Shown here piece after piece: positions 16,954 through 53,119 of a DNA stretch of 64,000 bases. The DNA comes from Tubulanus polymorphus (taxonomy: Eukaryota; Animalia; Nemertea). A model generated the notes under the pieces. It saw nothing but the letters and a program-made list of their open reading frames with translations. It was not told the DNA's origin and made no database searches. The position numbers and the translations under genes are program-made. How positions within the stretch are numbered: position 1 is the stretch's first letter; each line of letters starts with the position of its first letter. The stretch lies in assembly GCF_964204645.1 (NCBI RefSeq), contig NC_134032.1, positions 8,358,275 to 8,422,274 on the forward strand. The letters are read 5' to 3'.

Positions 16954-18990
16954 TTATTTCAAACATTCGACGATTTTTGCACGAGCCTTTCGCGCTGCGT
17001 TTCGCACGGGTCGCGGATCGGAGGCTATAACGGGGCCAGGCTCTTTAAAGTCCATATCGGTGTTAATTTCAAGCGGGAACAGTTTATTTATAGGTCGGCT
17101 AGTATTTGTAGTGCCCATTCTAATTTCTGCTGAACGAACTGCGCCGTCGTTCCCGTAGTTCAGTTTCGTTACGATAGCAAGCTTCCAGTTAATTCTACGT
17201 TTTTGGTCGTCGTGTACGAGTACAACGTCTCCTGATCGAATCTCGCTTGTTCTGCCATTATTTCGCATGGACAGATGTCGTTCACGTAGCGCAATAACGT
17301 ATTCGTTGGTCCAACGAGACCGAAAATGTTCGAAGAGTTCCATCACTCTTTGTGCGCGTTTCTGGAGGTTTTGTGTGTTTATCGAAACACCATACTCCGG
17401 ATCACTGATAGCATCGGTATCAGATAGGTGCGGTAGATTCGACATAACTCGTCCGTGAAGGAGGTGCGATGGTGTTAGCGGTTCTGGGTCAGTTACGTCA
17501 TCGGACAAATACGTAAGCGGGCGGTTGTTGATCACCATTTCGATTTCCGCGACGAGCGTAATAAGTTCAGACATCGATATGTATGCGCGGACTAAAACAC
17601 GTTTCAGAACTTGTTTCGTAAGTCCAACTAAACGTTCCCAAAAGCCACCATGCCATGGGGCGGCCTTTGGTATAAATACCCATTCAACATTTTTCTCGAG
17701 CATGTATTTTCGAACCGAATGAATATCGAGAAGCTTCTTTATTTCTCCCGCCGCGGCCACGAATGCCGATCCATTATCACTTATCAACTTTTGGGGTAAG
17801 GATCGACGTGCGGCGAAACGTCGGAAGGCGAGAAGAAATGTGGCACACGACATATCAGAAACAACCTCGAGATGAACGGCACGTGTGTTCGCACATGTAA
17901 ACAAGATAATATACGCTTTCGCTTCTCTGTTGTTATCTCTCACGAACAAATGTCCGGTGAAATCCACTCCCGTTACGGTAAAGGGAGGGGCATCTGTCAG
18001 CCTGCTCTTCTGCAACGGTGCAGGGTCCGGTAGTGGGTATGGCTGACCACTAATGATTTTGCAATTGTAACATTTTCGCAACAGAGATTTAACGATTTTC
18101 CTGATACTTTGAATCCAATACGTTTGTCGAATACGGTTAATCGTTGATTCTGTACCCAAATGAAGTGCTCTCGCGTGAGCATCAATCACAGTTAACTCGG
18201 TAAATCGCCCTTTCGGGGGTAGTAATATTGGGAATTTCGCGCCATAATCAATCGGGGCGTTATGGAGTCTCCCTCCAACTCTCAACAAACTATCATCGCC
18301 AATAAACAACCGTAGCTGTTTTGTCAGGGGCGCTCGCGATTTTGCATGATTACCCTGCAGCACGAAAATTTCATTCGAATAATTAGCATTTTGCACAGCT
18401 TTAATCCACGCCGTTCTAGCTCGGGCTATATCATCCGGCGTCAGATCCGCGGCGGACCGATCTGTCTGGCGTTGAAATTTCGCGACAAACAAGAAAACGT
18501 AAGCGGTGACACGTAATAATGATCCCAACTCTATGAATCGTTCAATGTCGATTATTTCTACCAAACCAATCCGTTCGTCCTCCGCGTCTTCAACCTGCCC
18601 GGGTTGAGGATCGTTGATGTGGAGGATATTAACTGTACTAGTGTCAGCGTATAATTTATCCACGGGCCAGTCGCCATGTTTCAGCCATTCGGGGCCAAAC
18701 CACCACAAATTAGAATGCCGTAGTTTCTCGGAGTCGATTCCACGCGACAGTATGTCTGCCGGATTATCAGACGTCGGGCAGTAACGGTACTCGTCAATTT
18801 TGATAGATTTAATCTGTTTCACGCGGTTGCTGACGAATACTGGTAACTTTCGATCGGAGTTCAACCAACAAAGCACAATCTGACTATCGCTCCAAAGCAC
18901 TTTTTTGGTTATAGCGATTTCGGAACCGAGCGATTCAGTTACATAATCGATAAGCTTCGAACCGGTCAAAGCAGCAAGTAATTCCAGTCG
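16954..18990 (-). CDS. BEL/Pao pol remnant: partial RNase H + integrase
   Basis: RLELLAA, WSDSQIVLCW, NPADILSRG, HHCC zinc finger, GVDFTG / ISDNG / GFWERLV DDE triad, GPF-like C-terminus. Confidence 0.9.
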   Translation of the reverse strand, partial: RLELLAALTGSKLIDYVTESLGSEIAITKKVLWSDSQIVLCWLNSDRKLPVFVSNRVKQIKSIKIDEYRYCPTSDNPADILSRGIDSEKLRHSNLWWFGPEWLKHGDWPVDKLYADTSTVNILHINDPQPGQVEDAEDERIGLVEIIDIERFIELGSLLRVTAYVFLFVAKFQRQTDRSAADLTPDDIARARTAWIKAVQNANYSNEIFVLQGNHAKSRAPLTKQLRLFIGDDSLLRVGGRLHNAPIDYGAKFPILLPPKGRFTELTVIDAHARALHLGTESTINRIRQTYWIQSIRKIVKSLLRKCYNCKIISGQPYPLPDPAPLQKSRLTDAPPFTVTGVDFTGHLFVRDNNREAKAYIILFTCANTRAVHLEVVSDMSCATFLLAFRRFAARRSLPQKLISDNGSAFVAAAGEIKKLLDIHSVRKYMLEKNVEWVFIPKAAPWHGGFWERLVGLTKQVLKRVLVRAYISMSELITLVAEIEMVINNRPLTYLSDDVTDPEPLTPSHLLHGRVMSNLPHLSDTDAISDPEYGVSINTQNLQKRAQRVMELFEHFRSRWTNEYVIALRERHLSMRNNGRTSEIRSGDVVLVHDDQKRRINWKLAIVTKLNYGNDGAVRSAEIRMGTTNTSRPINKLFPLEINTDMDFKEPGPVIASDPRPVRNAARKARAKIVECLK

Positions 18991-20888
18991 AGAACGGTTG
19001 AATTCCTTACTCCGGTGAGTAAGGTGTGGCTCGGTATGGGCCCTGATAAGAGATACCCTATACGTGATGAAACGGCAGTCGGGCCGTAGCCCTTCACGGT
19101 ATTATCGCCGACTATAGACCAGTAGTAATCGGCGCCAATTAATACATCGATATCAAAGTCGCCGGTTATTGATGATGGCTGTTCCGCTAGAGTTAGGTTT
19201 CGCAGATGCGGAAGATCCAAAACTTTATTGTTTACAAGATTGCTGATTGGCGTGGAGATGGTCGGTATCACGAGGGCTTCAATTAGTATCGGTGAACCCT
19301 CTGATGACGCGATGTTAAAGTTCGTTCTTTGAAGTAATCGCCGACCGGCCAGTTGTTCCCCGAACGTCGCTAGATTGATTTCCTCTTGGCCCAGATGTGG
19401 GAGATTTAAGCTGACAGAAACTCGCGTCGTGATAAACGATCTATGGCTGCCTTCGTCCAGTAAAATGTTTATCTTACGACCATTCGAGCGGTTATTAGCG
19501 GAAGTTGATGGCGAAAAAATCTCCGCCACAGCTGTTTTAAGAAGTATGGGCCCATCTGGTCGTGGTTGTTGGGCGCCGGCATACGTTTGATGAACAGTTT
19601 TTACATCGTGAGAATCGCTTCTGCTTCCGTTTTGTGGGTTTTGCGGTCGATTTTTCGTAGAAATCTCGCGCGTTTCTGTAAGGGAGGAACCACATAGTAA
19701 CGTGTGATGTTTCCCTCTGCACTTTTTACATGTGTTCTTGGATTTACAGTCCCGAGAACGATGAGTGCCCATGCAATTAAAACAAAGTTTATCACGTTTA
19801 ACGATATCCAGGCGTTTCTCTGGTTCGGTTACAAGAACACAATCTGACGCGAAATGTGTCCCTTTACAAAATGTACATTTTAATGTTTTTCTCTTGATCG
19901 CATTGCCCACGTGGAACGCTGACGTGGTACCCAGGTGAGCAGTTTCTGGGTACACTGAAACTCCTGCCTGGAACGCTGTTATCTCTCTCGAAAGGGCATC
20001 TCGCAACGACTGGAGATTCCAATTCGCGCCGTTATTATCCCTCGTTATCTGTCGTCGTATCATCCCAGGCAGTTTATCTAAGATAATCGGAGTCAACAAA
20101 TCTCCGTAGCTATCTTCGTTTTTTCCGAGCGCACTTAGTCCTCGGATATATGTTTCCAGTTTGTCCGAAAATTCCATCAGACTCTGCATGTCTTCTGTCG
20201 GTCGCGAAAGTTCCCATAACGCTCGCATATATGCACTGATAATGATTTGCGGTTGCCCATACCTTTTTATCAGTACTTGAAGTGCGTTCGCATAATTCGA
20301 CGCGGTGAGGGCCAGACCCTCGATCGTTCTGTAAGCTTCGCCGTTAAGTTGTGCGCGTAAGTATTGAAACTTAACGACGTCGTCGAGATTCGGGTCGTCG
20401 TTGACCGCTGAATTGAATCCGTCTATGAATTCCTGCCATTTGAGTAAATCGCCGTCGAATTTGGCGAGCGTAATTTTAGGTAGATTTACCTTGTTCGGGC
20501 GAAATGGCGTCGCAGAAGCACCGGAATTGTTCATCGAAGAATTATGAGGTTGCGTTGTGTGCTTCGCCTTTTCTACAAATCGGATTATTCGGCCGCGTTT
20601 TTCGATGACGCTAGATCTGAAGTCCTCTGCTTCTTGAATCGTGTCTGAAAGATGCGTTAAAGGAGTTAGGTCCTCGATTGTCGAGTCTAGCTTCTCTAGT
20701 CGACTTAACTTTTCTGTGATCTGCTCGATGTAGATATTTAGTAAATCTACATCGTCTTCGGTCGTTCGAAAATCTTCGACGATTGTTGACGATTTCACGA
20801 CGAGATCATCAACTTTCTGCCTGATTGCAGTTCGTGTGATTGTCGACCGGTTCAGTTGAGTATCCTCCATTCGGCTGATCCTGGTCAC
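18966..20888 (-). CDS. BEL/Pao Gag + aspartic protease
   Basis: LPKITLAKFDGD/DUF1759-like gag; three zinc knuckles (CTFCKGTHFASDC, CFNCMGTHRSRDC, CKKCRGKHHTLLC); protease LLDEGS and DVLIGAD. Confidence 0.9.
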   Translation of the reverse strand: MTRISRMEDTQLNRSTITRTAIRQKVDDLVVKSSTIVEDFRTTEDDVDLLNIYIEQITEKLSRLEKLDSTIEDLTPLTHLSDTIQEAEDFRSSVIEKRGRIIRFVEKAKHTTQPHNSSMNNSGASATPFRPNKVNLPKITLAKFDGDLLKWQEFIDGFNSAVNDDPNLDDVVKFQYLRAQLNGEAYRTIEGLALTASNYANALQVLIKRYGQPQIIISAYMRALWELSRPTEDMQSLMEFSDKLETYIRGLSALGKNEDSYGDLLTPIILDKLPGMIRRQITRDNNGANWNLQSLRDALSREITAFQAGVSVYPETAHLGTTSAFHVGNAIKRKTLKCTFCKGTHFASDCVLVTEPEKRLDIVKRDKLCFNCMGTHRSRDCKSKNTCKKCRGKHHTLLCGSSLTETREISTKNRPQNPQNGSRSDSHDVKTVHQTYAGAQQPRPDGPILLKTAVAEIFSPSTSANNRSNGRKINILLDEGSHRSFITTRVSVSLNLPHLGQEEINLATFGEQLAGRRLLQRTNFNIASSEGSPILIEALVIPTISTPISNLVNNKVLDLPHLRNLTLAEQPSSITGDFDIDVLIGADYYWSIVGDNTVKGYGPTAVSSRIGYLLSGPIPSHTLLTGVRNSTVLDWNYLLL

Positions 20889-33712: not shown

Positions 33713-36075
33713 ATCTACATCTACATCTACATAGGATACTGCATATGAACCGCGATCGCGCGTTTTACGATGCAGGGGGAAGGTGGTGCGATTTGGTGGT
33801 GGGTACTGAGGCAGCAGAACATATCACATGGCTCATCTCCTGACTGATGTTGTTCCAGTCCACAACTGTTCTCGGGAAGAAGCAGTTTCGAAACTCCTCG
33901 GTCGATGTTCTAAACTGTAGCAGTTTACAATCGTTCCGCCGTCTAGTTCTTCCGGATCCTTTGTTGATGTAATTTTCTTTGTGGATAGCAGGGACTGTTC
34001 CGTTTACTATTCCAGCCATGAGCGCTATGCGATTTTCTTGGCGGCGGGAGGTTAGGCTTGACCAATTCAGTTCCTCCAGCATTCTTGTGACGCTATTGGT
34101 ACGCTTATAGTTTCCGGTCACGACTCTCGCGGAGATCTCGAGATGTTCAATGTTCTTTCGGTGGTACGGTTCCCAGACTGTCGACGCATACTCAAGCTTC
34201 GATGTGACCAGTGAAATATAGGCTACCTCCTTTAGAGGTTTCGGGGCGTACCGAAGGTTACGCGTTACAACGCCCAGGGTCCTGCTAGCAGAGGCAACGG
34301 TTGAGTTGATGTGGGTATCCCATTTCATGTCATTTGACAGCGTGATACCCAGATAAGGTGTTGAGGTGACAGTCTTCAGGATGTGGTTTCCTAGCGTGTA
34401 CGGTCTACTTGATGATTGACGGGTGATCGGTAGGATGTAACACTTAGCTGCATTAAAACACATGCCCCAGGTTTCCGCCCGTGCCTGCAATGAGTCGAGG
34501 TCCTGTTGTAGGGTGTGCTGGTCCTTGATGGAGTTTATTTCCCTATACAACAGGCAGTCAGCACTCCTGACTCTACTGTAACCGATGCTGACTTAGCCCC
34601 TCCACGATAACTTCCTGGACTCTCCCGCAAAGAAAGTCAGCAATCCAGTCGCGAGTTGCTCCTTGGATTCCGTAGTTGTCGAGTTTCATTAGTAGACGCT
34701 GGTGGGGTACCTTGTCGAAGGCCTTCTAAAATCTAACACAGCCACATCAATCTGTTTCTTCTTATCAAAGGACTCAAACAAGTCGTGCATAGTTACTATC
34801 AGCTGTCTCACAAGAGTGACCCTTTCTGAAGCCGTGTTCATTTGATGACAAGATACCGTGCTCTTCGCAATGTTTGAGAATGCTTCTACATATTATATGC
34901 TCGAGAAGCTTGCTACAAACACATGTTAAAGAGACGGGTCTATAATTTTCTGCTTTGTGACGGTCGCCCTTCTTGTAGACAGGTGTTATGAATGCTTTCT
35001 TCCAATCCGAGGGAAGTTTGCCCTGTTGTAGCGACTGTTGGAAAATTGCTGTGAGGATTGGTGCTATCTCTTCTGCAGCCTCTTTCAGTACACGATTCTG
35101 GATGGCATCTGGCCCACAGGCTTTTCCTGGATTGAGATCAGCTAGTAATTTACACACCCCGTCCTCATCAACAACTGTGTCATTTGCTGGGGGGAATTTT
35201 CGCCCGTGTACCGGCGGGCCTTGGATTCGGCATTACTGAACAGTGTGCGCTTAGGGGGGATACACCCGTACTGTCTTTTTTCTTCGATTTAATCTGCAAA
35301 AGGAGCGATTGCGATTCCTCAAGCGATTGGTTTAGAACTCTCTGGACGTATTTTCGATGAGCAGCATTTAGCAATCGACTGGTTAGCTTCTTTTGGGATT
35401 TGTAACGTGCCATGGCTGCATCTGAGTAGTTTCTCTTCATTCTAGATTGCTTTCCTTACGGTGTGGTTTAACCATGGTAGGCTATTTTTGTAACCACCTA
35501 CTGTATTATGGGGGATAGTTTCCTGGGTTATACGCTGGATACCAGCTCTAAACATCATCCAATTTGAATCCACCGATCGCTTGTCGAACTCATCATTGAT
35601 GATGTCTTTACCTAGGTTCCTCACTTCCGATTTTAACTTCGGCCAGTCCGCTTTCCTGAAACAAGGCACCTTACGCTTTGGAGTTTTGGTCATCATTGGT
35701 CTGCGTCTGCGATCACGGTTTCATGGTCACTCAGCCCAGGTGCAGTTTGTATCTTTTTCACTAAGGAGGGGTTGGATCTAATAAGTAGATCCAGTAATCT
35801 TCTCTTGTTTGCTCTACCTGTATTTGTGATAGCCCATGTTGGTTTTGGATATCAATCAGTCTCTGGCAACTCCTGGTTTATAAGCACCCGAGAGGACTCA
35901 GTGTGTATCCCAGTCGATGCCTCCACAGTTGAAGTCATCGCCCAGGATGATTGTTTTCTCAGCACTTTTATCGGGCAGGCGGTTTAGCGACTCATTGAGT
36001 TGTTCAAGTTGTTCTGCATTCTCATCAGGGGGCCTATAGAAACTCCCGACAAATAACGACTTGCAGTTTGCTAGA
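33713..36075 (-). mobile_element. 5'-truncated CR1-group LINE (partial APE endonuclease + RT), degraded
   Basis: GSFYRPP and GDDFN endonuclease motifs; KACGPDAI, NYRPVSLT, YLGITL, FFPRTVVDWN; 3' (ATGTAG)n microsatellite tail at ~33713-33731. Confidence 0.88.
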
Positions 36076-38300: not shown

Positions 38301-41300
38301 TTTAGCAACGGACTTTTTGCGCGTTGCCAATTTTACAAAAACTGAAAATTCAAACGATTGAATTTATGTGTTAATACCAGTTTATTTGACGTCTTAATCA
38401 GTTGGATAGCAGGCACAGAGTGATGATAATTAGTTACAGTATATACAGAATAGAATCAAATATTATACTACTTGATTACTCATACTTCATCAGATCGTAA
38501 CTGAGATTGTCCTAAAATGACTTTTCTTTAACTACATACTTAATACAAAGGCCTATTTCTACAAACAAATAATCATTAGCCGTCATTTTAGATTAAATAC
38601 CTAATCTATAAAAATTGACTCTCAGTACCAAATGTACGTGTTACATAAAGGTCTGATTTCTCAGCTAAGCCTAGGTACACATTTATGCCAAAACATATAT
38701 AAGATTTAACTATGAAAAATGGATGTAACTCACCTGAAAATTCAAACGATTGAATTTATGTGTTAATACCAGTTTATTTTACGTCTTAATCAGTTGGATA
38801 GCAGGCACAAAGTGATCAAATCTGTGCTGCCAAAAACCAAGTTGATTAAGACACTCCCATCAAGAAATTAGTGACCAAAACTTCTAGCGATTGGTTCATC
38901 CAAATCTTAATGACCTATTAAGACACTAATTACCTGATGAGAGCTAAACTAGTTGCGAGGGCAGGTGAGTTGAGAGTTGTTTATATTGCTATTACATCAC
39001 TTATTCAAAAATAGTGCCAGTTCGCTAGGCAGACAAAATACTCAATAAACAAGACAGCCTACTTGAGCTGCCAAAACGGTATCCGGGTAAAAGTGACAAA
39101 GACTAAGGGTTAGATCCATTAATGGACATAGGAAAAATCTACAAATATGTTTTCTTAGCTACAAATGACCTGGCAAAATATTGATTACAATATTTAAACA
39201 TAAAAACACAATCCGCAGTTCCAGATAAAAATACTCCTTGCTAAACTCTCCCACACTATATTCAAGCTTTTGTCCACAAAAGCAGAAAATCAACACACAA
39301 GCCTAGGGAGGTAAAAATATAAAGTCATCTCATTCAACATAAGTCCTGCAATATATCTCTAAAAACTTACATTCCTATTCCATTGCATAATTCTTATAAT
39401 ACTAAAAGGGTAAATACATGGCAAAACATCAGCAACAATCAACATAATCACCTAACAATAGACAGTGACTCATCGATATTGTTATATTAGAAAAAATAAC
39501 CCGAATCCAGGTGTAGTAACATTAATAATCCTTATCATATAAAAATATGAAATACTCATCAAATGATAGATATAGTAAAAAAAAATTCACAGATACAGAA
39601 AAATCACCGCCACCATTTAGCTGCAACATCGGGGCATTAAAAAATACTATAAAACATAGGATATACATTTTTTTTTTTTTTCATAATATAACTATGTACA
39701 ATGATCTGTACCATGAAAGTAATACAAGTTCCATCACATGGGTAAATAGTACGCCAGATCCATATTATACTCGAAAACTTGACATGTAGTATTTTAACTG
39801 AAGGTAACCCTTGACGGAATATAATTAATCAATAACCCAACAAAATTTAGACAACCACAGATTCATTCTCTTTGAAGACGCATTGCACAAAATTCAAGAT
39901 AACCGTCACGACGATTCAAGTTGACCGGTGTGGGGTGGCAACTAACGGACAGCGTAAGTTGTACCAGATCCAGGCGGACACGAGAGAAACATCCCGCACG
40001 AGATAAGTCAGAGCTCACCAAGGGAAGAGACTAATCACGAAACATACTTCAACAAATTCCAGTATTCGAAAAATCGTTCCACCTAATAAAAAGAAATTCA
40101 ACCTAGGAGTATGACACCTGCTATTTCAAGCAAGAGACCGGAAAGGAGAGTTGTGCGCATAACTCATAGCACATATTAGTTGTCTCTTTCGTGCCAAACT
40201 CCTAAAAAAAAAAATACTCCAATCACAGGTGAAACAGCAAAATCGAGTTATGATCCCTTGAAACAGGACCTTCGTTTTCGCGTTTTACCCTGTCTCGTGT
40301 GGGTACGGAAGAACTCGTCCTTGGCCGCCTGGGTAAGATTATCAGAAGGTTGCCACGAATTTGGAGATTTATCGGACCATTTTACATAGCAGAGGTGTCT
40401 TTCAAATTCTGTTGAAACTGCTCGGCGATGACGGTCGTAAGAGCCTGCAATTTCTCCACAGCAGGATCCGTTGAAGTTGCAGCAGCGGCTACAACAGGTG
40501 TAGATAACGGCACGAAATTGCTTGATTTTTCGACGGTCAGGGCGATTTTTCGCAGTTTCGGCATACTATCGGGCAAATGTCCAGCTACAGTCGCCGCAAT
40601 TCGTGGCTGTAACCCTTGTATTGCCCGCGAAACGATTTGTTGCGGGGTCAGTGACGATTGTGACGCGAGAATGTCGATACGGTTAAGATAATCGTTCACC
40701 GACTCGTTTTGCGCTTGCATAATATTGGTCGTAAGCAACTGGTCCTCCAACGGCTGAAAGCGCTCTTTCAGTGCCGCTTTTAACTTATTGATATCTAGTT
40801 GGTCGGCAACCGGGAGGCTGTTCTTGATATTGGCCGCATGGTGCCCTAAATGATACCAAAACACATCGACGTGTTTCTCCGCTGGTACGTTGTTCAGCCT
40901 GAGATATTGGTCGAAACGATCCAACCAGGCTGGTACATTGGTACCATACCCGACGCCAAAATAATCCAAACTAACTTTCGGCATATTGCTTTGTTCGTCC
41001 CGTACTAACGCGTGCGCCTCCTGATTGTCCGTGCTGTGCACACGTATATCGACGGGCTGCAGACTTACCGGAGAGCTCGGTACAGCCAAACTCCAGAGAG
41101 GATCGTTCCTCGAAGTCGTCGATCTTGTTATCCTGCCGTTGTTTTGTGCTACCGAGCGAGGATTCATTTGCGAGAGGTTTCGGAAATCGTTAAAGGGTTC
41201 TCACCATTTTAGCAACGGACTTTTTGCGCGTTGCCAATTTTACAAAAACTGAAAATTCAAACGATTGAATTTATGTGTTAATACCAGTTTATTTTACGTC

Positions 41301-42081
41301 TTAATCAGTTGGATAGCAGGCACAGAGTGATGATAATTAGTTACAGTATACACAGAATAGAATCGAATATTATACTACTTGATTACTCATACTTCATCAG
41401 ATCGTAACTGAGATTGTCCTAAAATGACTTTTCTTTAACTACATACTTAATACAAACGCCTATTTCTACAAACAAATAATCATTAGCCGTCATTTTAGAT
41501 TAAATACCTAATCTATAAAAATTGACTCTCAGTACCAAATGTACGTGTTACATAAAGGTCTGATTTCTCAGCTAAGCCTAGGTACACATTTATGCCAAAA
41601 CATATATAAGATTTAACTATGAAAAATGGATGTAACTCACCTGAAAATTCAAACGATTGAATTTATGTGTTAATACCAGTTTATTTTACGTCTTAATCAG
41701 TTGGATAGCAGGCACAGAGTGATCAAATCTGTGCTGCCAAAAACCAAGTTGATTAAGACACTCCCATCAAGAAATTAGTGACCAAAACTTCTAGCGATTG
41801 GTTCATCCAAATCTTAGTGACCTATTAAGACACTAATTACCTGATGAGAGCTAAACTAGTTGCGAGGGCAGGTGAGTTGAGAGTTGTTTATATTGCTATT
41901 ACATCACTTATTCAAAAATAGTGCCAGTTCGCTAGGCAGACAAAATACTCAATAAACAAGACAGCCTACTTGAGCTGCCAAAACGGTATCCGGGTAAAAG
42001 TGACAAAGACTAAGGGTTAGATCCATTAATGGACATAGGAAAAATCTACAAATATGTTTTCTTAGCTACAAATGACCTGGC
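38301..42081 (-). mobile_element. Ty3/Gypsy LTR element lacking pol (gag + integrase chromodomain tail only)
   Basis: ~863-bp LTRs at 38301-39163 and 41208-42070 (offset 2907, about six differences). A TGG-starting PBS-like sequence directly follows the 5' LTR (41206 downward). No PR, RT, RH or IN core. Confidence 0.88.
40382..41167 (-). CDS. Gypsy Gag (capsid-like), truncated by the internal deletion
   Basis: WLDRF, LKAALKERF, Q..NESVNDY..R and IQGL retrotransposon-gag motifs. Confidence 0.8.
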   Translation of the reverse strand: MNPRSVAQNNGRITRSTTSRNDPLWSLAVPSSPVSLQPVDIRVHSTDNQEAHALVRDEQSNMPKVSLDYFGVGYGTNVPAWLDRFDQYLRLNNVPAEKHVDVFWYHLGHHAANIKNSLPVADQLDINKLKAALKERFQPLEDQLLTTNIMQAQNESVNDYLNRIDILASQSSLTPQQIVSRAIQGLQPRIAATVAGHLPDSMPKLRKIALTVEKSSNFVPLSTPVVAAAATSTDPAVEKLQALTTVIAEQFQQNLKDTSAM

Positions 42082-43199
42082 CGCTGGGGTCTGGGTGCCC
42101 TCCCCAGAAAAATCTAAAGAGATAATTATCATCTTTTAAAACGTGAATCATCTTTTAAACGTGAATCATCTTTTTAATCTCATTGTTTAAGTCATCAAAC
42201 AACTGGCTTCCACCGTAAAAACTAGTTTCATATAGCAAATATATACCTGTCCACCGAATAGTACAAGCGTTGGTGGAAAGTAGGTTAACATAAATGCAAG
42301 AGTGCGATATCGTGCCATGCCGTTTGTGGTACTGTCGATATGTGACACCAACTCAGGACACAGGCTTCCGTCACGCGCTATTCGCATTTTTCGTATGCGC
42401 TTTTTTGCGTGCACATGGAATGAAACATCACATTTTCCTCAGGTGAGGTCACACGATATGCGCTCGTATTCACGCAAATCGTCTCGCGTATTATGTCGAA
42501 TGATTCAGCCGCGTGCGACGATGAACTAAGTATTCCAGATAACTTCATACAAAGTGTAACTTTCCTGCCGATTATCATAACAATCGGTATTTTCCTGAAC
42601 AGTCTGAACATTACTATTCTCAAACGCCAGTCATCGCAGCACAGGTCGCTGTTTCTCCTCAGAGCGTTAGCCGTTGCCGATATTTCTTTTCTGGTCGTGA
42701 AATTTTTTCGCGAATTCTTACGTCAATTGCTGAACGTCGCGGTCTATGGACCCGCGTTTCAAAACAAAATGGAGACAAGACAAAATGGAGAAAGGCTCCA
42801 GTGAAAAATTTTTCGGATTCTATATGCTGTATTTTCCAATGGTGATCTTTAACCGATCGACTAAGTTGACGAGGAACTGGATAACGGTGCTGATAGCTAC
42901 GGAACGAGTTGTTAGTCTCGGTTTCCCGTTGTTCGCCCAGGCTCATATAACCGAACGCCGTTTATATGTTTGTATTTGTATACAGTATGTTTTATTCGCT
43001 TGTTTCGCCATTGGATTCATGTTAAATATAGGACATTCTACTTATGGGTTTGATGTCTGTACGGGAATTTACATTCCATTGCTCACCAAAAGGAAATTAA
43101 ATCGAGTAGAAAATTCCGTTTATTATGGTGGCTGATAAGGGCCATAGCGTAAAATTCCTGGTATGTAAATGAGGGCGCCAGAACGCAGAAACGAAAAAA

Positions 43200-43525
43200 A
43201 AGTCCAGTTTTCTCTGAAAGTTCGTTTTTGCGCGCCAAAACGGACAATTTTCCGTTTTGGCGCCCCCGCCAAAACAAACTTTCATTTTGGCGCCCCAAAA
43301 CAACGAAAAACGTCGAAATTTCTCTAAAATTTCGTTTTGGCGCGCCAAAACGGAGAATATTCCGTTTTGGCGCCTCCGCCAAAACGAACTTTCATTTTGG
43401 CGCCCCGGCCAAAACAACGAAAAACGTCGAAATTTCTCTGGAAGTTCGTTTTGGCGCGCCAAAACAAAGAAAATTCCGTTTTGGCGCCCCCGCCAAAACG
43501 AACTTTCGTTTTGGCGCCCCGGAAA
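43200..43525. repeat. Left subterminal array (~115-120-bp higher-order unit) of TTTTGGCGC..CGCCAAAA motifs
   Basis: About nine palindromic or quasi-palindromic motifs, mirrored at the right end. Confidence 0.9.
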
Positions 43526-43599
43526 CGTGTCTACTCCAGATGCTGACATACAAATTATGTACATACGCATACGTACTCGTGCACGACCGCTTAATTATA

Positions 43600-45893
43600 A
43601 TGGACACCGTTCGGTCTTGTATCCTTTTACGTAATAAAGACCAAGTTGCTCAACGGTCGATTTTGCTGTTGATCTTGTTGATGATCTTAACAGATTCCTC
43701 TAGTTGATGATACTGTTAGGAAGCTTTTTGCAGATGGGTTCACAAATGCAGAAATGAGTATTGCCATGTTATTTAACTTTGGAATAACTATTAGGTACGT
43801 ATATATATATACGTAGCTGCAGACAATTGAAATCTATTCTTAGACCATCTAAATGTAGGCCATGGAACAGTGAACGCCACCTCAAACGACAATTGAATAG
43901 GTTAGGTTTGAAAAGGAACAACAATTACGTTCTCAATGACGTAACCGCTGCAGTCGAGGAAAGTAATCCGAATTTTTGAAGTGATGCTTATATCTGATAG
44001 AAATTGAAAATGTCTTTTGGGTTTAAGATTATGTTCTCTGCATTATTACAAGTTGAGCTTGCTGGCAGCGGATGTTGCATGGGATATCGTGCTATGTCAC
44101 AACGTCTCCGTCAACGCTACGGAATAATAGTCCCTAGGTAAGATGTATGATCGGGTGGCTACCTACACGGTTAATTCCTGACATGATAAATGAGGGCACT
44201 AAAGTACCAAAACGCCATTAAAAAAAACTTAATTTCTCGAAAAATATTTTTTTGCCAAATTGAAGAATTGTCAGTTTTGTTACTCCTGACAAAAAGAACT
44301 TTCGAATCGGCCAGCATATGTATAAATGTGTATTTGATTGATGTAAGACCTTTAAGATGAGATCTGGATCACTTCACTCATTTGTTATATGATTGTTTAC
44401 TTCTAGGTCTCTAGTTTCCAATATCCTTCAGAATTTAGACTTCGAAGGAGTACAGAATAGGACCCATGGAGTTTTAAGACGACGACGTTACTTTAAAAAG
44501 GGTCCGAATTATCTTGTCCATCTCGATGGTTATAACAAGCTCAAGCCTTTTGGTTTCCCGATTCATGGGTGTATAGATGGGTAAACATAATATATAATTG
44601 ATATATCCTAAAAGATATTATTTCCACCTATCAACAGCAGAATAGTAAATACGTAAACGATAGTAAATAATTAGAGGCGTCGTTTACAATCTGGCTGTAT
44701 TCAGAACTGCTTTCTTGGATGCTTTAAGTTCAGAATTTGGTTTGTCGAACATGTTCATAATCACAGTCTATATTTAAAAGATTTTCCCGACGAATCCTTT
44801 GGTTAAGAGTTGGAAATACTAATAATGACCCAGAGGTGGTTGCGTGGTACTTTTTAGATTTCGTTCAGGACATTGAAGGTAGATAGAATTGTCATACATA
44901 AATACACAATGTGCCGAAATTATGCCTGTGAAAAATTATCTGTTATCAATCGACGATTAAGATAATACTCTGACCATCATCTTTATATCATCATTCAGCA
45001 GTTCCTCGCTGCATCCGTATGGACGCTGGAACCGAAAATGGCAGAATTGCAGCGATTCAGAAGGCCTTTAGAGCAGAATATGACGACGAAACGTGCGTTC
45101 TTGTGGGTAGATCTACGAGTAATCAGGTTCGTGGAGTCATTAATATGGGTAGATTTGGACAATCTCCATTTCTGCGCTAGAACCAACTTAAGATACTTCA
45201 AAACTCACCAATTATTTTATGTTTCTTTGTTTTAAGCGCATTGAACGATGGTGGCGAAGTCTTCGAAACGAAGTTGTTCAGTTTTGGATGAACATATTTA
45301 AAGATATGGAGGAAAATGGAAGTCTATCTACCGCGGACGTTGTGCACATGTAGGTTAAATACCCGCCTTTAAAGCGCGTGGCGATTTTGTGTGCTCCACG
45401 TAGTAATTTCCCTTTCTCCAATATTTTTCAGTCAAACCTTAAGATATTGTTTTTTTGATTTGATAAATGCCGATCTTTAGGATTTCGTGCAGGAGTGGAA
45501 TACACATGCCATCAGGCCTCAACGAAATGTGGATGTTCCACCCGGAAAACCTGATCTATTATACTTCTCGCCGGAATATTACGGTACGAAATACGCTGTA
45601 TAAAAATGAGCATAGGTTTCTAAGTTTACGATGTTTTTATCACTTCTTGATAATACGAAATAATATTTTCAGGCACGATAGACTACAAATTTCCAGTGGA
45701 CGCTGGACTACTTCAGCAAATTCGAGAGGAATTTTGTAGTAAGCCGAATGAATCGAGAGGCTGTGATCCGGACTTTTCAGCGATGTGTGATCTTATAACG
45801 AGACAGGGACAACAATCAAGACCGACATCAACCCCAGAAGCCGCTGCTTTGTTTGACTGGCTATTAACTCAATTCAGAGAGCATACATGTTAG
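43600..45893 (+). pseudogene. Spliced IS3/integrase-like DDE transposase with N-terminal HTH; one premature stop
   Basis: Exons ~43600-43608 (putative), 43694-43794, 43871-~43960, ~44053-44137, 44407-44580, 44781-44878, 44999-45126, 45237-45349, 45432-45583, 45673-45893. They join to give GPNYLVHLDGYNKLKPFGFPIHGCIDGFSRRILWL..PRCIRMDAGTEN..GRSTSNQRIERWWR..WNTHAIR. In-frame TAG at 45478-45480. Confidence 0.88.
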
Positions 45894-46691
45894 AATCATT
45901 TTTATACGTATCTGTCCTGCACGGTTATGTGTTGTCTGTTCATGATGGATTTCGAAGATTCAAATATATCTATGATATACGTTACGCGTTGAAAAGAATA
46001 TGATTGTAATTTTTCATGGATTCATGCGACTGTTTGGGCTTAGTAATACATCATACTAACACTACCCATGTTTTAATTCGCTATCCAACCCCATCTCAAG
46101 TAGGTGTCTCAGAAATAGCATACACGTGCCATCAATTTACATGGAGAATTATCTGCGAAAGCGTACTCCAGTATCCGCTATTCTCAAAACGCTTCAGAAT
46201 AAATTTGCGTATGGTTCAAAAAGACTTTGTATTAATATACTTATATTATATGTTATAATTTCTTCGAAAAATAAAGATTATTATTATTATTATTATATTA
46301 TATTATTATTATAAGATGTATTTTTGATTAAATTTATTTTGAGAAAGTTCTATGAAGCGGTTGTTTAAAAAGTGGTCTTATGGACAAGTCACATATCTTT
46401 CATCCTCGCATGTCAGGGGTCTGGTATCGCACCCCGAACTCGTTTCCACCACCCCCTGGCCTCACGACGCGTGATTTCATTACTGGCTGAAATACCTCCT
46501 TGTACGCTGATTGGTCCATTTAACGGGAAAACCAACAGAAGCCTATAATGTCGTTTGCTTAAAGCGCTGTGATTGGTACGACCGAATTCTGGTCGGCTAG
46601 TAACGACTCCAACGACTCGCGAGGTCAAGTGGTTCGGGGAACACGGCTTTAGCTTAGTGAATTCGATTCCCACGACAGGTGAAGATGCATA

Positions 46692-46865
46692 CATTGAAAC
46701 CTCGTTACAACGAACCTCTGGGGACCAGAAAATATTGTTCATTTTTACAGATATTTCGTCATATCCAGTGTGAAATTAATCAAATTGTCTAATGTGGGAC
46801 ACAATCTTGTATTTGTTATGTCCGATGAATCGTTGTATCCCACTTAGTTATAACGAGTTCCACTG
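46692..46865. mobile_element. Tigger/pogo-like MITE inside the IS3EU-like element
   Basis: TA flanks; TIR cattgaaacctcgttacaac / gttataacgagttccactg. Confidence 0.65.
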
Positions 46866-47575
46866 TATCTCTATATGAATGTGCAATTTTGACAGTATAT
46901 AATTTAATCGTGTTCGAATACGTGCCAATGACACTTTCGTACCACGATATCATTTGCAGCTCAAGTGAAAGTGAGACACCATGAAAGAACGAAAACGCAA
47001 TGAAGTGAAGATATTTGAATATTTTAATCGAAGTATCAAAGTTTCTCTTAAAAGCCTTAAAACATTATCTACGTTTTAATACCGTGTTGATACAATATAT
47101 CAATATGTACTTAAAGATGATTGTCTTACAATTTCGAGACAAAACATAACTTGACAGCAGAGAAGTGGCACCCCCAAATCGCCCTGTTTTCAATACAAAC
47201 AAAAAACGTATTTGGTCATGATTGATGCCCTGATTTGAAACAACATATATAAGGAGCAAGTTTAACAGCTCTCGGTAAGGTTTGACTCGAGAGTTAAGTC
47301 GGTTTTTTTTCAATATTTCCAATGCTTTAACTCTAGAGTCAAACTTAACCGAGAACTGTAGAACCTGGTCAAAATGCACTGCATGAATAATTACTTCTAT
47401 CATTAAAAAGATCGTCACTAAGTAATTCTATGATAAAAGAAACGACATCAGGGCTGGCAATATTAAAAATAAACACACCACTTTTGGCCTAAACAAAAGA
47501 ACTTAAACACGTTTTGATCCAACTTTGAAAATATGAAAATTACGTGGATTACGTCATTTCGTTTCTAGAATAATT

Positions 47576-50101
47576 TTATACGACGTCCATAACCCAAACA
47601 TTGCTCTGGAGAATATTATCGAATTCTTGTTTCAGTTCGACGTATTCGTCATATGTTTCTGGTAACTCCAATATCTGGGCACATGTTCGAGCAACTGGAG
47701 CTCGTTGGAAACCGTCTACCTTAGTAAAGGTCACGTCAATCTTTTGGCAGTTACAGATGTCAGAACCAGTACAATAGCGGAGGAACTTAGACAACATGCT
47801 TTCATCCAATGATCTGACATATCTCTTCAGTAACGTAGCAACATTTGACTGAGGAGCTGACAAAACGTTTGGAAAAGAAAGTAATTCTACCACTTTGCGA
47901 CAGGAGGGTTTAAGATCGAGGTACTGTTTATATGATATTGTTACATATTTCTGTATCATAGGTTTTATACAATCAACTATAAATCTCGGCTTTTGCACCA
48001 ATTCCTGGTGACTAATTTCCCGAATCAACATGGAGAAGTTCTCCTTCGTAGGAAGTTTCCGACATTCATATCCCCCCAGTATGTCTATTATCTCTTCGAC
48101 GTCATTTGCTTCATCATCGAAATTAGCCAATGCGCGTCGAAATACCAGCTCCTCAGACGGAGAAACATATTTCAGGAATGATTCGACCAAGTCTATACTA
48201 TCATCCTGCTGGAAGAGCAATTCGGAAACAAATGGCTGCGCGAGGAATATTGGGAAATATGATGTTTCCTGAAATCCTTTACTGATGATGCGTCCTACAG
48301 CCTCCCATTTCTCTGTGCCATAATCATGGCGTATGAGAGGGATCATCTGACTACTACCCGTCATACATTGACAAGACACTCTCGAAAGACACCGTGTTCT
48401 TCTCCGGCTTCAACATTTCCATTAGGGAGTATCATTCGAGCATTTATTATTTTCCCCATCACCGATGCATCACAAAAAGCGTTTATCATATCTTCGACCA
48501 TGGCTGTTCTGCGAACCAGAAGGTTGTATACTTCCCGTTCAATGCGATTAATCTCTTCTTGTGATAACTCGCCACTCGTCTGTACGCTGAATTGAATTGT
48601 AGGCGTATCAGGCTGTATCAATTCGAAATCATTAAAGTTGATATCTGCTATACCATCACGGGAATGTGTATCATTTGCACCCGTATGTATGCCAACAGCA
48701 CCGGTAGGCACATAACCAGACTGAATCCCGGTCGCAAATAGAGTTGAAAGTGTATGGGCAGATTGGGTATGCGTAGTTAAAACGATAGGTTGAATATCAC
48801 TACTAGCCGAAATTGTAGATGAGGCTGCTGGCGTAAACGACAATGCCGGTTGCATCAACGAAAACATAGGTAAAGTTGACTCAGAAATCGGTGGCTGGTG
48901 GGTATTAGCAAGAAAGGATGACATGGATGGCAAGGATGTTTCATCATCACTATCGTCAACTAAAACAGTTGTGTGAAGATAGAGCCTAATAGGGTTTGTT
49001 TTATGTGCTGCGATGTAGGCCTCTAGACCAAAAACATTACCACACTCAAGATAATCACATAACCGATTACCATTGAAATTTGCTAAGTAATAGCTCACAT
49101 CATTGATTTTTAGGTTCATCGCATTCGATTTGCCGTCTGGAAAAAATAGGTTTAAGAACTCCATGGTTAAGGCCGACAAGTTCATTTCTTTTTTCAGGTC
49201 CAAAGGTCCCGCTTTTGATGGCGTGTTTCCAACCTAGTTTTATTCGTCGTGTATCTTTCTCTGCATTTTTTGTCGTCATTGATTTCTTGGTGCCGGCCTT
49301 CCGTTTTTGAAATTGCGTTCTCAACCTGCACAAAACACTAGATGATCCTGAAAATGAAATAATAAAGGAAAGTGTTATATATTTTAAGTAAACAATTTAC
49401 AAATTTGTAAAAAGATCCATTGATCGCAGACCCGTCGTAAGTCGAATCGCAAGGATAGAACAAGTTCTATTTCAGCGATGAGTTATGCGTCAAATGACCT
49501 TTGGACTCGGCGATGATTGAATCGTTGTCGATCTGACTGTGACAAACGAATCGCCAATAGGCGGTCACGTGTTTACTACCGCTGTTTTTACGACGAGATG
49601 GTCGTCGTAAGTCGACCTCAGCTTAGCTTAATCACGAGAAATAGGAACAAGCCTGCATAACCTCTCTAAAAGTATAACCCTCTGATAGCACAATCTCATG
49701 GACAGGAATTGAATTAGCGTAACGGTCAGTGACAACGGTCATGAAAGTTGGAATTAAGCACGTGATTTATCTTAAAACTCAAATTATTACCTGCACTAGA
49801 CACATTTTCATCTTCTTTAGGCTGAGAATTTACTATCCTACACCTATTCCTTAGCCGGACTCTATCCCCGATAGCTGTAACTTCTGCTGCTTCAAAATCA
49901 CTATCTGTCATGGTCGTGACGTCACTAACACCTATCTGGATGAGAAATTAAAATATGATACATTTTCAGAAGTTATGGCCCTATAGCATTACCAATCGGG
50001 GCAAGTCTGTGTATACATAAAGTATTGAAACACGGTACCTTATTTTCGAGAAACTTTGCAATGTATTGACCTAATCCCAATTCTAGGAGTGTGTTGTCCA
50101 T
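47576..50101 (-). pseudogene. SAM-domain + HECT-domain E3 ubiquitin ligase (G2E3-like HECT) with two frameshifts
   Basis: Exons 50101-50039, 49935-49791 and 49347-47576 with GT-AG introns. SAM: LLELGLGQYIAKFLENKIGVSDVTTMTDSDFEAAEVTAIGDRVRL. HECT: EAGEEHGVFRE, FLRYCTGS, P.ARTC..ILELPETY..LKQEF with the catalytic Cys. Frameshifts at ~49203 and ~48370. Confidence 0.85.
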
Positions 50102-50789
50102 CTGTAAAGAAGACATTTACGAATTAACGCCATTGAATGATTATAATTCATTAGTTTTCACTAATGCAGACCGAGCAAAATAATCGTCGCTTACAATGAT
50201 TAGGCAGTACGAGAGAAACGGTTCACGTCGAAAACTTAGAATACTACCAGTACGTGTTATATTGCCTGCGCATACCAGAGAACGACATCGGTTTTTTTGA
50301 TAAGTTTTCAGCCGCCGAAAATCAACCGATTTTTAACATATATTGGCATATGAAAGAACAAAGTTTATGAATAGGCCTATGTGAGCTAAGCAATGCGAGG
50401 CAATGTATAGGATTTAAATGATACCAGGGGCTGATCCAGCATTTTTTAAGGAGTGGGGGTCGAGAGGGTACGGTGGTGCTCTGCTGGTCATCCCGAGAAA
50501 TTTTAAAAACTTAGTCCCATTTTCATGCTTTGTAAGCGTTTTTAGGCGCTACTTGATCATCTCATACATTTAAGATGTAGGCCTAACATGTCTACTTTGA
50601 AAAGTAGTTTTCCAAGTGGGAGGGGTTCTCGAGGACCCAAAGCAACCCCTGCATTTAACCCTGAATAGGCTACATACCTGTTCGTTAGTCCGTTAATGTA
50701 TACACCACCACCATCGACAACGATATGTATTATCACGTATACCTAGATCCGACTCGTAACAAAATCGAAGGGAGACGAATCGGATTTTC

Positions 50790-51300
50790 AAAGAAAGTTC
50801 GACGTTTTTCGCTGTTTGGCGGGGGCGCCAAAATTAAAGTTCGTTTTGGCGGGGGCGCCAAAACGGAATTTTCTTTGTTTTGGCGCGCCAAAACGAACTT
50901 TCAAAGAAATTTCGACGTTTTTCGTTGTTTTGGCGGGGGCGCCAAAATGAAAGTTAGTTTTGGCGGGGGCGCCAAAACCGAATATTCTTTGTTTTGGCGC
51001 GCCAAAACGAACTTTTAGAGAAATTTCGACGTTTTTCGTTGTTTTGGCGGGGGCGCCAAAATGAAAGTTCGTTTTGGCGGGGGCGCCAAAACGGAATATT
51101 CTTCGTTTTGGCGCGCCAAAACGAACTTTTAGAGAAATTTCGACGTTTTTCGTTGTTTTGGCGGGGGCGCCAAAACGAAAGTTCGTTTTGGCGGGGGCGC
51201 CAAGATGAAAGTTCGAAAAACGGAATTTTCTTTGTTTTGGCGCGCCAAAACGAACTTTCAGAGAAAATTGGACGTTTTTTTTCGTTCTGGCGTTTTGGCG
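50790..51300. repeat. Right subterminal array of the IS3EU-like element
   Basis: About 13 TTTTGGCGGGGGCGCCAAAA / TTTTGGCGCGCCAAAA motifs in ~115-bp units. Confidence 0.9.
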
Positions 51301-52168
51301 CCCTCATTTACATACCAGGAATTTTACGCTATGGCCCTTATCAGCCACCATAGTTTATCGCGTATCATCGACTTTAACGTCTGCTTTCACGAGTCTTTTG
51401 CCCGTTCTATTTCTCCTGATCCTCAACACGGTTCTTGTATTCGTGCTACGAAACATCGGTAGAATTAGAGTGAATCTCACGCAAGATCCAAAATACAGAA
51501 ACATCGACCGAAAAGCTACGAAAATGGCAATCGCTATCATCGTCATGTTTCTACTTTTAGAACCTGCAACATCAGTTAGACCCTACGTTAACACGATTGT
51601 GAGACTGCTTGATCTACCTCGTCCTAGTGATGGCGTTCAAGGGGTCCTTTCCCCGAGATATGATACAGTGTTGATACTTGTACCCCAATTGACTGGGTGA
51701 AGCGTTCCGTTATGGGAACCTATTTTACTGCAGCTCCTGAGATTCGTCTAGTCAGATAGAAAAATCTAAATTAACAGTGGTTTATTTCATAAATAAAGGT
51801 AAGCCAGTTTTGTCTTCAGTTAACATCAAGCTATGACTGTTCAAGAAGTGTCCGAAAGGGAAAAGAAAAAAAAGAATCATACTGTGATTTATATACATGT
51901 TCGTTGTACATTCTTGTGTATTCATACATGTATTGTTAATTCTCTTCTGTGCTCAAAACAAATGTTTTTTTTGTTCAACAAAATCAACTAAATATATCAC
52001 CAGTATCTCAATTGGATCCATGGCCGAACGGGCAGGACGTGTACCTGGTCTCCAGAACTAACCCACAAGTGAGATACTATATTTAGTTGACACATTACAC
52101 TACAACAATTTGGTTTTGGTTCAACAGCGGAAAAATAGTTTTATTAGTAAATAAAACTTGAAAATCAA

Positions 52169-53119
52169 TTATTTCGCTGAATTTCTACGGCAGACCTGTG
52201 TACAGAAATATTCACGAATTTCTCGCCCGAGTAAAAGATATACGTAAAAATTAACGACATAATTACACAATTCGAATAGAGCGGAAATATCTAAAAATAA
52301 ATCCGTCCGTGTCGGTGAGATTGGTAAAAATACAGCAAGAATATTTGGAAGTGTAAATATTGCAAATGCGAGTGAAACTGTTACAAGCATTACTGTTGTA
52401 CGTTTTGATTTTGTTGTTTTCTGATCTGACGAAACGATTTTTGATCCTCTGAATAACCGAACTATAATAACAGAATTTGATACAATAATCAAAGTTAGCG
52501 GCATGAGAAAAACGTATATTACATAAGTCATAAAATTCAGGGATTGATCAAAAGGCTTGTAATAACATCCAAAATAATCCAAAAATTTCATGTTTGCTGA
52601 CGGAGCAATACCAACAACCAATGCGTTTATTGTGGAAATAATGAGAACGACGCATCGGGCGAATCTCGGTGTACATAACAAACGAGATGTGAACGGGAAG
52701 AGCACGACCGCCGCGCGTTCTAAAGATATTGCTACTATCAACCACGCACTATTGGCACCCATACAATTCATCACAAATTCGTAGATTTGACAACTGATCA
52801 ATGAATTCACTATGAATGTTGAACCACTTTTTACATGCAAAAGAACAAACTGTAAAACAGGCATCAGTGTGAAACCGATACAAAATATAAAGTCACTGAG
52901 AGACAAAGCTATCAGATAGTTAGCGTAAGATAAACTGCGGAATCTACGGCTTATCATTATCAGGAATGTAGCTATATTTCCAAAGGCTCCTAACAGGAAT
53001 AAAGTAGGCAGGATAACCAATAATACACTACGGTAGCTACCAGACTTGTTCACCAAAGACATGAGAACGATGTTGCTGCAATAAGATCGACTAACAATCT
53101 GCGTGTTAGTAGAATTCAT
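52169..53119 (-). CDS. Intronless class A GPCR, paralog of 9771-10718, 316 aa
   Basis: Colinear with the 9771 protein: LFLLGAFGN, ISLERAAVVLFPF, SKRTT.MLVTVSLAFAIFTLP, CNYVVNFY.Y.LLGREIRE. Confidence 0.93.
   Translation of the reverse strand: MNSTNTQIVSRSYCSNIVLMSLVNKSGSYRSVLLVILPTLFLLGAFGNIATFLIMISRRFRSLSYANYLIALSLSDFIFCIGFTLMPVLQFVLLHVKSGSTFIVNSLISCQIYEFVMNCMGANSAWLIVAISLERAAVVLFPFTSRLLCTPRFARCVVLIISTINALVVGIAPSANMKFLDYFGCYYKPFDQSLNFMTYVIYVFLMPLTLIIVSNSVIIVRLFRGSKIVSSDQKTTKSKRTTVMLVTVSLAFAIFTLPNILAVFLPISPTRTDLFLDISALFELCNYVVNFYVYLLLGREIREYFCTQVCRRNSAK

What the first reader, a model, noticed from the sequence alone, without database searches (positions are those of the whole stretch)
43124..51352. 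DNA transposon carrying its own SAM-HECT ubiquitin ligase opposite a spliced IS3-like transposase
Seen in sequence: perfect TIRs and a 6-bp TSD bound an 8.2-kb unit with two convergent intron-containing genes. One is a ~10-exon DDE transposase (HLD / RMD / RIE triad). The other has an N-terminal SAM domain and a C-terminal HECT domain that retains the catalytic Cys (ARTC). Established: HECT domains are E3 ligases, and SAM domains mediate polymerisation or protein/RNA binding. The terminus and TSD pattern fits the little-studied IS3EU group as I recall it. Inference: the ligase is an integral accessory gene that could ubiquitinate host silencing factors or regulate transposase turnover, so this would be a transposon-encoded proteostasis or anti-silencing module. 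Such genes are probably often annotated as host 'G2E3-like' ligases. This copy is decayed (one stop, two frameshifting deletions). I cannot tell whether the pairing is already described.
Basis: partly seen in the sequence, partly recalled or inferred. Interest (0 to 1): 0.88.

Follow-up and report, generated by a model that had tools for sequence, protein, structure and literature searches.

The report
Jumping gene carrying its ubiquitin ligase
A DNA transposon in a ribbon worm carries, beside its cutting enzyme, a gene for a ubiquitin-tagging (HECT E3) enzyme, and the same pair sits in related transposons of starfish, beetles, molluscs, fish and frogs, so the tagging gene looks like a long-kept part of the element, not a host gene picked up once.

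Summary
Confirmed. Window 43124-51352 is a decayed copy of a young IS3EU/GingerRoot-type DNA transposon (TATGG..CCATA ends, 57-nt perfect TIR, 6-bp TSD, about 260 termini genome-wide) in the nemertean Tubulanus polymorphus, inserted in a GPCR gene. SAM is not called by Pfam; it rests on a predicted fold of the starfish homologue. Every long copy examined carries both genes; six keep an unbroken HECT exon. The convergent pair recurs in ten other species from five more phyla, inside TIR plus 6-bp TSD in four, and in 5 of 5 loci picked by the transposase alone. Shared changes are mostly synonymous and the two genes partly co-diverge: not a one-off capture. Substrate and activity are untested; the tail has Met, not the usual -4 Phe. 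IS3EU is known to encode two proteins; I found no paper naming the second a HECT ligase, but could not read Repbase or Kojima 2019. The scan noted this pairing before at other places in this genome.

The parts
43118..43123 (.). left target-site duplication GTTTAT
43124..43180 (+). left TIR, 57 nt perfect, starts TATGG
43209..43522 (+). left subterminal array, 114-nt unit, 2.8 copies
43600..45893 (+). DDE transposase gene (PF24764), 10 exons; exons 2-10 at 43694-43794, 43871-43958, 44052-44137, 44407-44580, 44781-44878, 44999-45126, 45237-45349, 45432-45583, 45673-45893; exon 1 from about 43600, end uncertain; broken by a stop at 45478 and a lost acceptor at 44050
44172..44311 (+). degenerate internal copy of TIR and subterminal unit in transposase intron 4
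   Evidence: (D4, D13); also in L012
50039..50116 (-). ligase gene exon 1, first part of SAM-like domain (start at 50116 or 50101)
   Evidence: profile match not significant alone
49791..49935 (-). ligase gene exon 2, second part of SAM-like domain (GDR motif)
47576..49347 (-). ligase gene exon 3: basic helix, ubiquitin-like (beta-grasp) domain about 49000-49250, Ser/Thr/Pro-rich linker, HECT domain about 47579-48520 with catalytic Cys at 47681-47683; frameshifting deletions at 49201 and 48371
50786..51290 (-). right subterminal array, 114-nt unit, inverted to the left one
51296..51352 (-). right TIR, ends CCATA
51353..51358 (.). right target-site duplication GTTTAT
42493..43123 (+). 5' part of the host GPCR-like single-exon gene split by the insertion (also frameshifted by a 16-nt duplication at 42760)
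51359..51700 (+). 3' part of the same GPCR-like gene, in frame across the empty site

Best explanation
An autonomous IS3EU/GingerRoot cut-and-paste transposon whose second gene is a HECT E3 ubiquitin ligase kept by selection for the element's own spread. Shown: ends, TSD, two convergent genes, HECT fold with catalytic Cys, conserved pairing (about 0.9 that the gene is an integral, selected part; about 0.75 that it is an active E3). From established knowledge: the transposase binds the TIR and subterminal repeats, excises the element and inserts it with a 6-nt stagger; HECT domains take ubiquitin from an E2 onto their Cys and pass it to a substrate; SAM domains oligomerise or bind partners. Inferred and favoured: the ligase works on the transposition reaction itself. 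SAM and the ubiquitin-like domain oligomerise it and bring it to the transposase-DNA complex, and it ubiquitinates the transposase or neighbouring chromatin and repair proteins, so that the complex is taken apart and the gaps are repaired, or transposase level is limited. It acts in trans, since about a hundred short gene-less derivatives share the ends.
For: All four other long copies aligned carry both genes, three with their own 6-bp TSD; six copies keep an unbroken 632-codon HECT exon. Pair convergent in Patiria, Astyanax, Phaedon, Haliotis, Lingula, Xenopus, Antedon, Oryzias, Photinus, Magallana; TIR + 6-bp TSD enclose it in Patiria (two sites), Phaedon, Haliotis, Oryzias. 5 of 5 transposase-picked loci had the ligase. 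Seven more diverged convergent pairs in this genome against 0.07 neighbours expected. HECT model pLDDT 96, best match UBR5 Z 22.4, rmsd 4.5 over 310 residues; Cys in at least 90% of 100 relatives. Shared changes among copies 6 synonymous to 2 replacement against 25 to 67 private, Fisher p 0.01. The three closest species pairs by ligase are also among the closest by transposase; rate-corrected Mantel r 0.67, p 0.002. Conserved N-terminal motifs across phyla suggest a conserved partner. Rust-fungus IS3EU have an alpha-kinase in opposite orientation (PMC12730594), and Ginger1 transposases carry OTU or Ulp1 proteases proposed to act in transposition (PMC2836005).
Against: The tail ends W-x-M-D-I-V with Met at -4 in 95 of 111 relatives, where HECT ligases usually need Phe (own knowledge). 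Rank Mantel test was null (rho -0.04); the rate correction was applied afterwards, and co-divergence may only reflect host kinship. Selection counts are small. 24 of 32 listed rva_4 loci in this genome have no listed ligase match within 10 kb, so related transposases may work without it. No SAM on the transposases of this clade, so no obvious docking partner.
Confidence: 0.45

Rival explanations
1. Anti-silencing or counter-defence ligase: SAM and the ubiquitin-like domain recruit host repressors (piRNA-pathway, HUSH-like or SAM-containing Polycomb proteins), which the HECT domain marks for destruction, so that the element stays transcribed.
For: Same evidence for an integral, selected E3. SAM folds of Scm, Sfmbt and SAMHD1 are among the structural matches. 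Fungal IS3EU carry TET/JBP genes proposed to escape methylation silencing (PMC12730594).
Against: TET/JBP cargo moves between superfamilies and groups by host genus, whereas this gene keeps a fixed place beside one transposase clade; N-terminal motifs are conserved across phyla, unlike most host-antagonist surfaces (inference). No direct evidence either way.
Confidence: 0.33
2. Non-canonical HECT: it forms a thioester or binds E2 and ubiquitin but does not ligate to substrates, and works as a scaffold, decoy or ubiquitin sink; or it transfers a ubiquitin-like modifier or targets non-lysine sites.
For: Met at -4 and invariant Trp at -6; only 12-18% identity to solved HECTs; the related G2E3 HECT is described as non-functional (PMC3673628).
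Against: Catalytic Cys and its Thr and Pro neighbours are at least 90% conserved in 100 relatives at 30-45% identity; both lobes are present.
Confidence: 0.14
3. Passive cargo: a host G2E3-like gene captured once and carried without function.
For: Plant GingerRoot elements capture host gene fragments (PMC6839031); the window's copy is decaying neutrally.
Against: Whole gene, same place and orientation in six phyla; closest relatives (37-45% identity) are transposon-borne, not host genes; 907 clusters at 50% identity with E below 1e-30; excess of synonymous shared changes.
Confidence: 0.03

Closest known systems
IS3EU/GingerRoot superfamily (Repbase; PMC10045372, PMC6839031)
   Same: TA..TA termini (TAYGG..CCRTA), 6-bp TSD, integrase-like DDE transposase without HHCC, two proteins (PMC8232023 citing Kojima 2019).
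   Different: Second gene is identified here as SAM / ubiquitin-like / HECT; no paper read names such a gene. Transposase has nine introns against one or two in the relatives examined.
Rust-fungus IS3EU with alpha-kinase and TET/JBP (PMC12730594)
   Same: Same ends and TSD; a protein-modifying enzyme gene in opposite orientation to the transposase.
   Different: Kinase and dioxygenase there, ubiquitin ligase here.
Ginger1, Mutator and Helitron elements with OTU or Ulp1 proteases (PMC2836005)
   Same: DNA transposons that encode ubiquitin or SUMO pathway enzymes.
   Different: Those are erasers fused to the transposase; this is a writer on a separate gene.
Class IV HECT ligases: UBR5, G2E3, 'GL-Metazoa' (PMC3673628)
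   Same: Divergent HECT; best structural match UBR5; G2E3 among Atlas structure neighbours.
   Different: No PHD/RING fingers; SAM and ubiquitin-like N-terminus; multicopy and transposon-borne. That survey does not mention transposons. Whether GL-Metazoa is this family was not tested.
RAG1 (Transib-derived) with its RING E3 (own knowledge)
   Same: A DDE enzyme coupled to its own ubiquitin ligase.
   Different: RING fused to a domesticated recombinase, unrelated transposase family and unrelated ligase type.

Membership tests
IS3EU/GingerRoot | TA..TA termini (TAYGG..CCRTA) with TIR over 30 bp | tested here: met
   definition
IS3EU/GingerRoot | 6-bp TSD | tested here: met
   GTTTAT here; TAAAAC, GAAACT, CTTTTG in three other copies
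IS3EU/GingerRoot | integrase-like DDE transposase without N-terminal HHCC | tested here: met
   PF24764 and triad; exons 2-4 align to the relatives' helical N-terminus, no HHCC
IS3EU/GingerRoot | two encoded proteins | tested here: met
   definition via PMC8232023
IS3EU/GingerRoot | transposase falls in the clade of Repbase IS3EU entries | not testable with these tools
   Repbase sequences not available
Ginger2/TDD | TG..CA termini | tested here: not met
   termini TA..TA; definition PMC6839031
HECT E3 ligases | bilobed HECT fold | tested here: met
   Foldseek E 1e-9, TM 0.67-0.72; VIA Z 22.4 to UBR5; top 19 rows all HECT
HECT E3 ligases | catalytic Cys in the C-lobe | tested here: met
   aligns to the Cys of UBE3C and HUWE1; conserved
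HECT E3 ligases | Phe at -4 from the C-terminus | tested here: not met
   Met in 95 of 111 relatives, Phe in 6; the feature is from own knowledge and is common, not universal
HECT E3 ligases | thioester formation and ubiquitin transfer | not testable with these tools
   bench test
SAM domain | Pfam SAM profile match | tested here: not met
   (best E 0.16 in the Astyanax homologue)
SAM domain | five-helix SAM fold | tested here: met
   starfish homologue residues 4-63: tankyrase SAM Z 6.8, rmsd 2.8, 59 aligned, most top rows SAM but HhH glycosylases tie; Atlas neighbour cluster HECT + SAM_1. Z under 8, so moderate
G2E3 orthologues | N-terminal PHD/RING-like fingers, single-copy host gene | tested here: not met

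The most novel reading that the evidence does not exclude
A widespread animal clade of IS3EU transposons encodes an unrecognised family of active HECT E3 ligases (SAM, ubiquitin-like, HECT; hundreds of diverged families, annotated as host genes from beetles to frogs) that is a required cofactor of transposition or a counter-silencing weapon, and this has not been recorded, even in Repbase.
Probability: 0.4. Interest if true: 0.82.

Novelty: new variant of a known kind. Interest (0 to 1): 0.66.

Why it matters
Transposons with ubiquitin or SUMO erasers are known, but I found no report of a DNA transposon with its own HECT writer. It gives a direct test of the old proposal that the ubiquitin system takes part in transposition: young, apparently unbroken two-gene elements exist in medaka-like fish, Xenopus and starfish relatives. 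It also implies that many 'uncharacterized' or 'G2E3-like' HECT genes in animal annotations are transposon genes, which would distort counts of E3 expansions, and it puts a function on the little-studied second gene of IS3EU.

Tried and rejected
Pfam SAM on exons and on 57 homologous N-termini: nothing; PDB sequence search of the N-terminal profile: nothing. Rank Mantel test null. TIR + TSD not found in the Xenopus, Photinus, Magallana, Astyanax, Antedon and Lingula loci (ends partly outside the fetched DNA or interrupted); L031 has the ligase gene but no transposase within 10 kb. The alpha-kinase beside the Haliotis element lies outside its TIR, so it is not cargo. GA donor after exon 3: gives the gap-free alignment and is in all copies, but in-phase GT donors lie 6 and 18 nt upstream, so unproven.
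Full report
Observation. The unit 43124-51352 starts TATGG and ends CCATA; the ends are perfectly complementary for 57 nt and flanked by GTTTAT on both sides. Inside each end lies an array of a 114-nt unit, inverted between the ends. Removing the element and one TSD joins two GPCR-like reading-frame pieces in frame, which confirms an insertion. The nearest database protein to the ligase is 100% identical and comes from Tubulanus polymorphus, so the genome is that nemertean or very near it.

Family in this genome. A 24-nt terminal pattern occurs 131 times forward and 129 reverse, the reversed control never; most listed pairs are 0.2-4 kb apart, that is, short non-autonomous derivatives. Four other long copies were aligned; they differ by 1.4-1.7% and all carry both genes; three show both ends with their own 6-bp TSDs. 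Six copies keep an unbroken 632-codon last exon of the ligase, and two of those examined also have a stop-free transposase. The family is young and the window's copy is one of the broken ones.

Transposase. Exons 2-10 chain in phase and hold the HLD, RMD and RIE motifs; they map in order on a profile of related transposases and hit Pfam rva_4. This copy has a stop at 45478 and a lost acceptor at 44050. Exon 1 is uncertain. The best donor after exon 3 is GA, but GT alternatives exist.

Second gene. Three exons on the minus strand. The last holds a HECT domain (Pfam E 5e-10). A model of the domain from an unbroken copy (pLDDT 96) matches solved HECT ligases over both lobes, best UBR5 at Z 22.4, and the ARTC cysteine aligns with the catalytic Cys of UBE3C and HUWE1 and is kept in at least 90% of 100 relatives. 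The tail is unusual, Met at -4. Pfam does not see SAM. A model of the N-terminus of the starfish homologue (pLDDT 87) matches SAM domains over residues 4-63 (tankyrase Z 6.8) and, over about 120-205, ubiquitin-like folds (kindlin F0, USP11 UBL, UBX, RA; Z 5-5.6; the model was cut before the end of that domain). The window's exon 3 matches that N-terminal profile in two pieces split by the 41-nt deletion and exon 2 matches the SAM part weakly. Atlas neighbours include clusters with HECT + SAM and HECT + UBX, the latter named G2E3-like.

Beyond this species. Loci of ligase homologues in Patiria, Astyanax, Phaedon and Haliotis have an rva_4 gene facing them tail to tail; Lingula has a transposase remnant there. 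TAC..GTA TIRs with 6-bp TSDs enclose both genes in Patiria (two sites), Phaedon, Haliotis and Oryzias. In the reverse test, five loci chosen by the transposase only (Xenopus, Antedon, Oryzias, Photinus, Magallana) all had the ligase gene in the same place, mostly unnamed by the annotation. In Tubulanus itself seven more diverged convergent pairs are seen from coordinates, against 0.07 neighbours expected, but most other rva_4 loci have no listed ligase nearby. The ligase family has 907 clusters at 50% identity with E below 1e-30; how many are transposon-borne was sampled, not counted.

Selection and co-descent. Private changes in copies are near neutral, shared ones mostly synonymous (ligase 6:2 against 25:67, p 0.01; transposase 4:2 against 23:71, p 0.04). 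The closest pairs for the ligase (Patiria-Antedon, Xenopus-Oryzias, Phaedon-Photinus) are also close for the transposase; rank correlation over all pairs is nil, Pearson r 0.41 (p 0.03), and 0.67 (p 0.002) after a post hoc correction for rate. Kin share both genes, so this shows long joint descent, not co-adaptation.

Mechanism. Cut-and-paste by the DDE enzyme with a 6-nt stagger follows from the family. That the second gene is an integral, selected part is well supported. What it tags is inference. I favour a role in the transposition reaction (transposase or nearby chromatin and repair proteins; 0.45) over degradation of host silencing factors (0.33), because the gene stays in a fixed place with one transposase clade and keeps conserved N-terminal motifs across phyla, whereas the anti-silencing TET/JBP cargo of fungal elements hops between superfamilies (PMC12730594). 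A non-canonical or decoy HECT remains possible (0.14).

Known or new. Ends and TSD meet the IS3EU/GingerRoot definition (PMC10045372; PMC12730594). IS3EU is described as poorly characterised and encoding two proteins (PMC8232023). None of the papers read mentions HECT, five paper searches found no such pairing, and a HECT survey lists very divergent G2E3-like families without mention of transposons (PMC3673628). Ubiquitin and SUMO proteases in transposons are known (PMC2836005). Repbase may already label the second protein; I could not check. Verdict: a new variant of a known superfamily, real and conserved, mechanism untested. Earlier notes of this scan report the same pairing at other places in this genome; my tests do not rest on them.

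Noticed in passing
window 43956-43964: Transposase intron 3 most simply starts GA (AG|GAAAGT) in all young copies, matching the GA-AG consensus in PMC7072748; in-phase GT donors 6 and 18 nt upstream are alternatives.
   Followed up: partly
window 44172-44311: A degenerate copy of the element's own left end lies inside transposase intron 4 and is shared by other copies; may be an internal transposase-binding site or an old self-insertion.
   Followed up: partly
window 16954-20888 (-): BEL/Pao-like LTR retrotransposon ORFs (DUF1759, DUF1758, integrase, DUF5641) with no reverse transcriptase hit.
   Followed up: no
window 38301-41756: Direct repeats 2907 nt apart around a 261-aa Retrotrans_gag ORF (40382-41167, -): a small gag-only, probably non-autonomous LTR element. 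A second 261-aa ORF at 33765-34550 has no Pfam hit.
   Followed up: no
window 9771-10718, 42493-51700, 52169-53119: Cluster of single-exon rhodopsin-type GPCR genes; the one hit by the transposon also has a 16-nt frameshifting duplication.
   Followed up: partly
L032 1-5930, L034 2056-5724: In both Xenopus tropicalis and Oryzias latipes the related element (61% transposase identity) lies next to a histone gene cluster, a possible shared target preference.
   Followed up: no
L030 16129-17055: An alpha-kinase gene just outside the Haliotis element; fungal IS3EU carry alpha-kinases, so it may belong to a neighbouring element.
   Followed up: partly
G000:C12 6.50-6.55 Mb (L016-L018): Three truncated copies about 23 kb apart, probably a segmental tandem duplication, not new insertions.
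   Followed up: no
P0023: A member of this ligase family is filed under a bacterial MAG (Candidatus Thiodiazotropha), probably host contamination.
   Followed up: no
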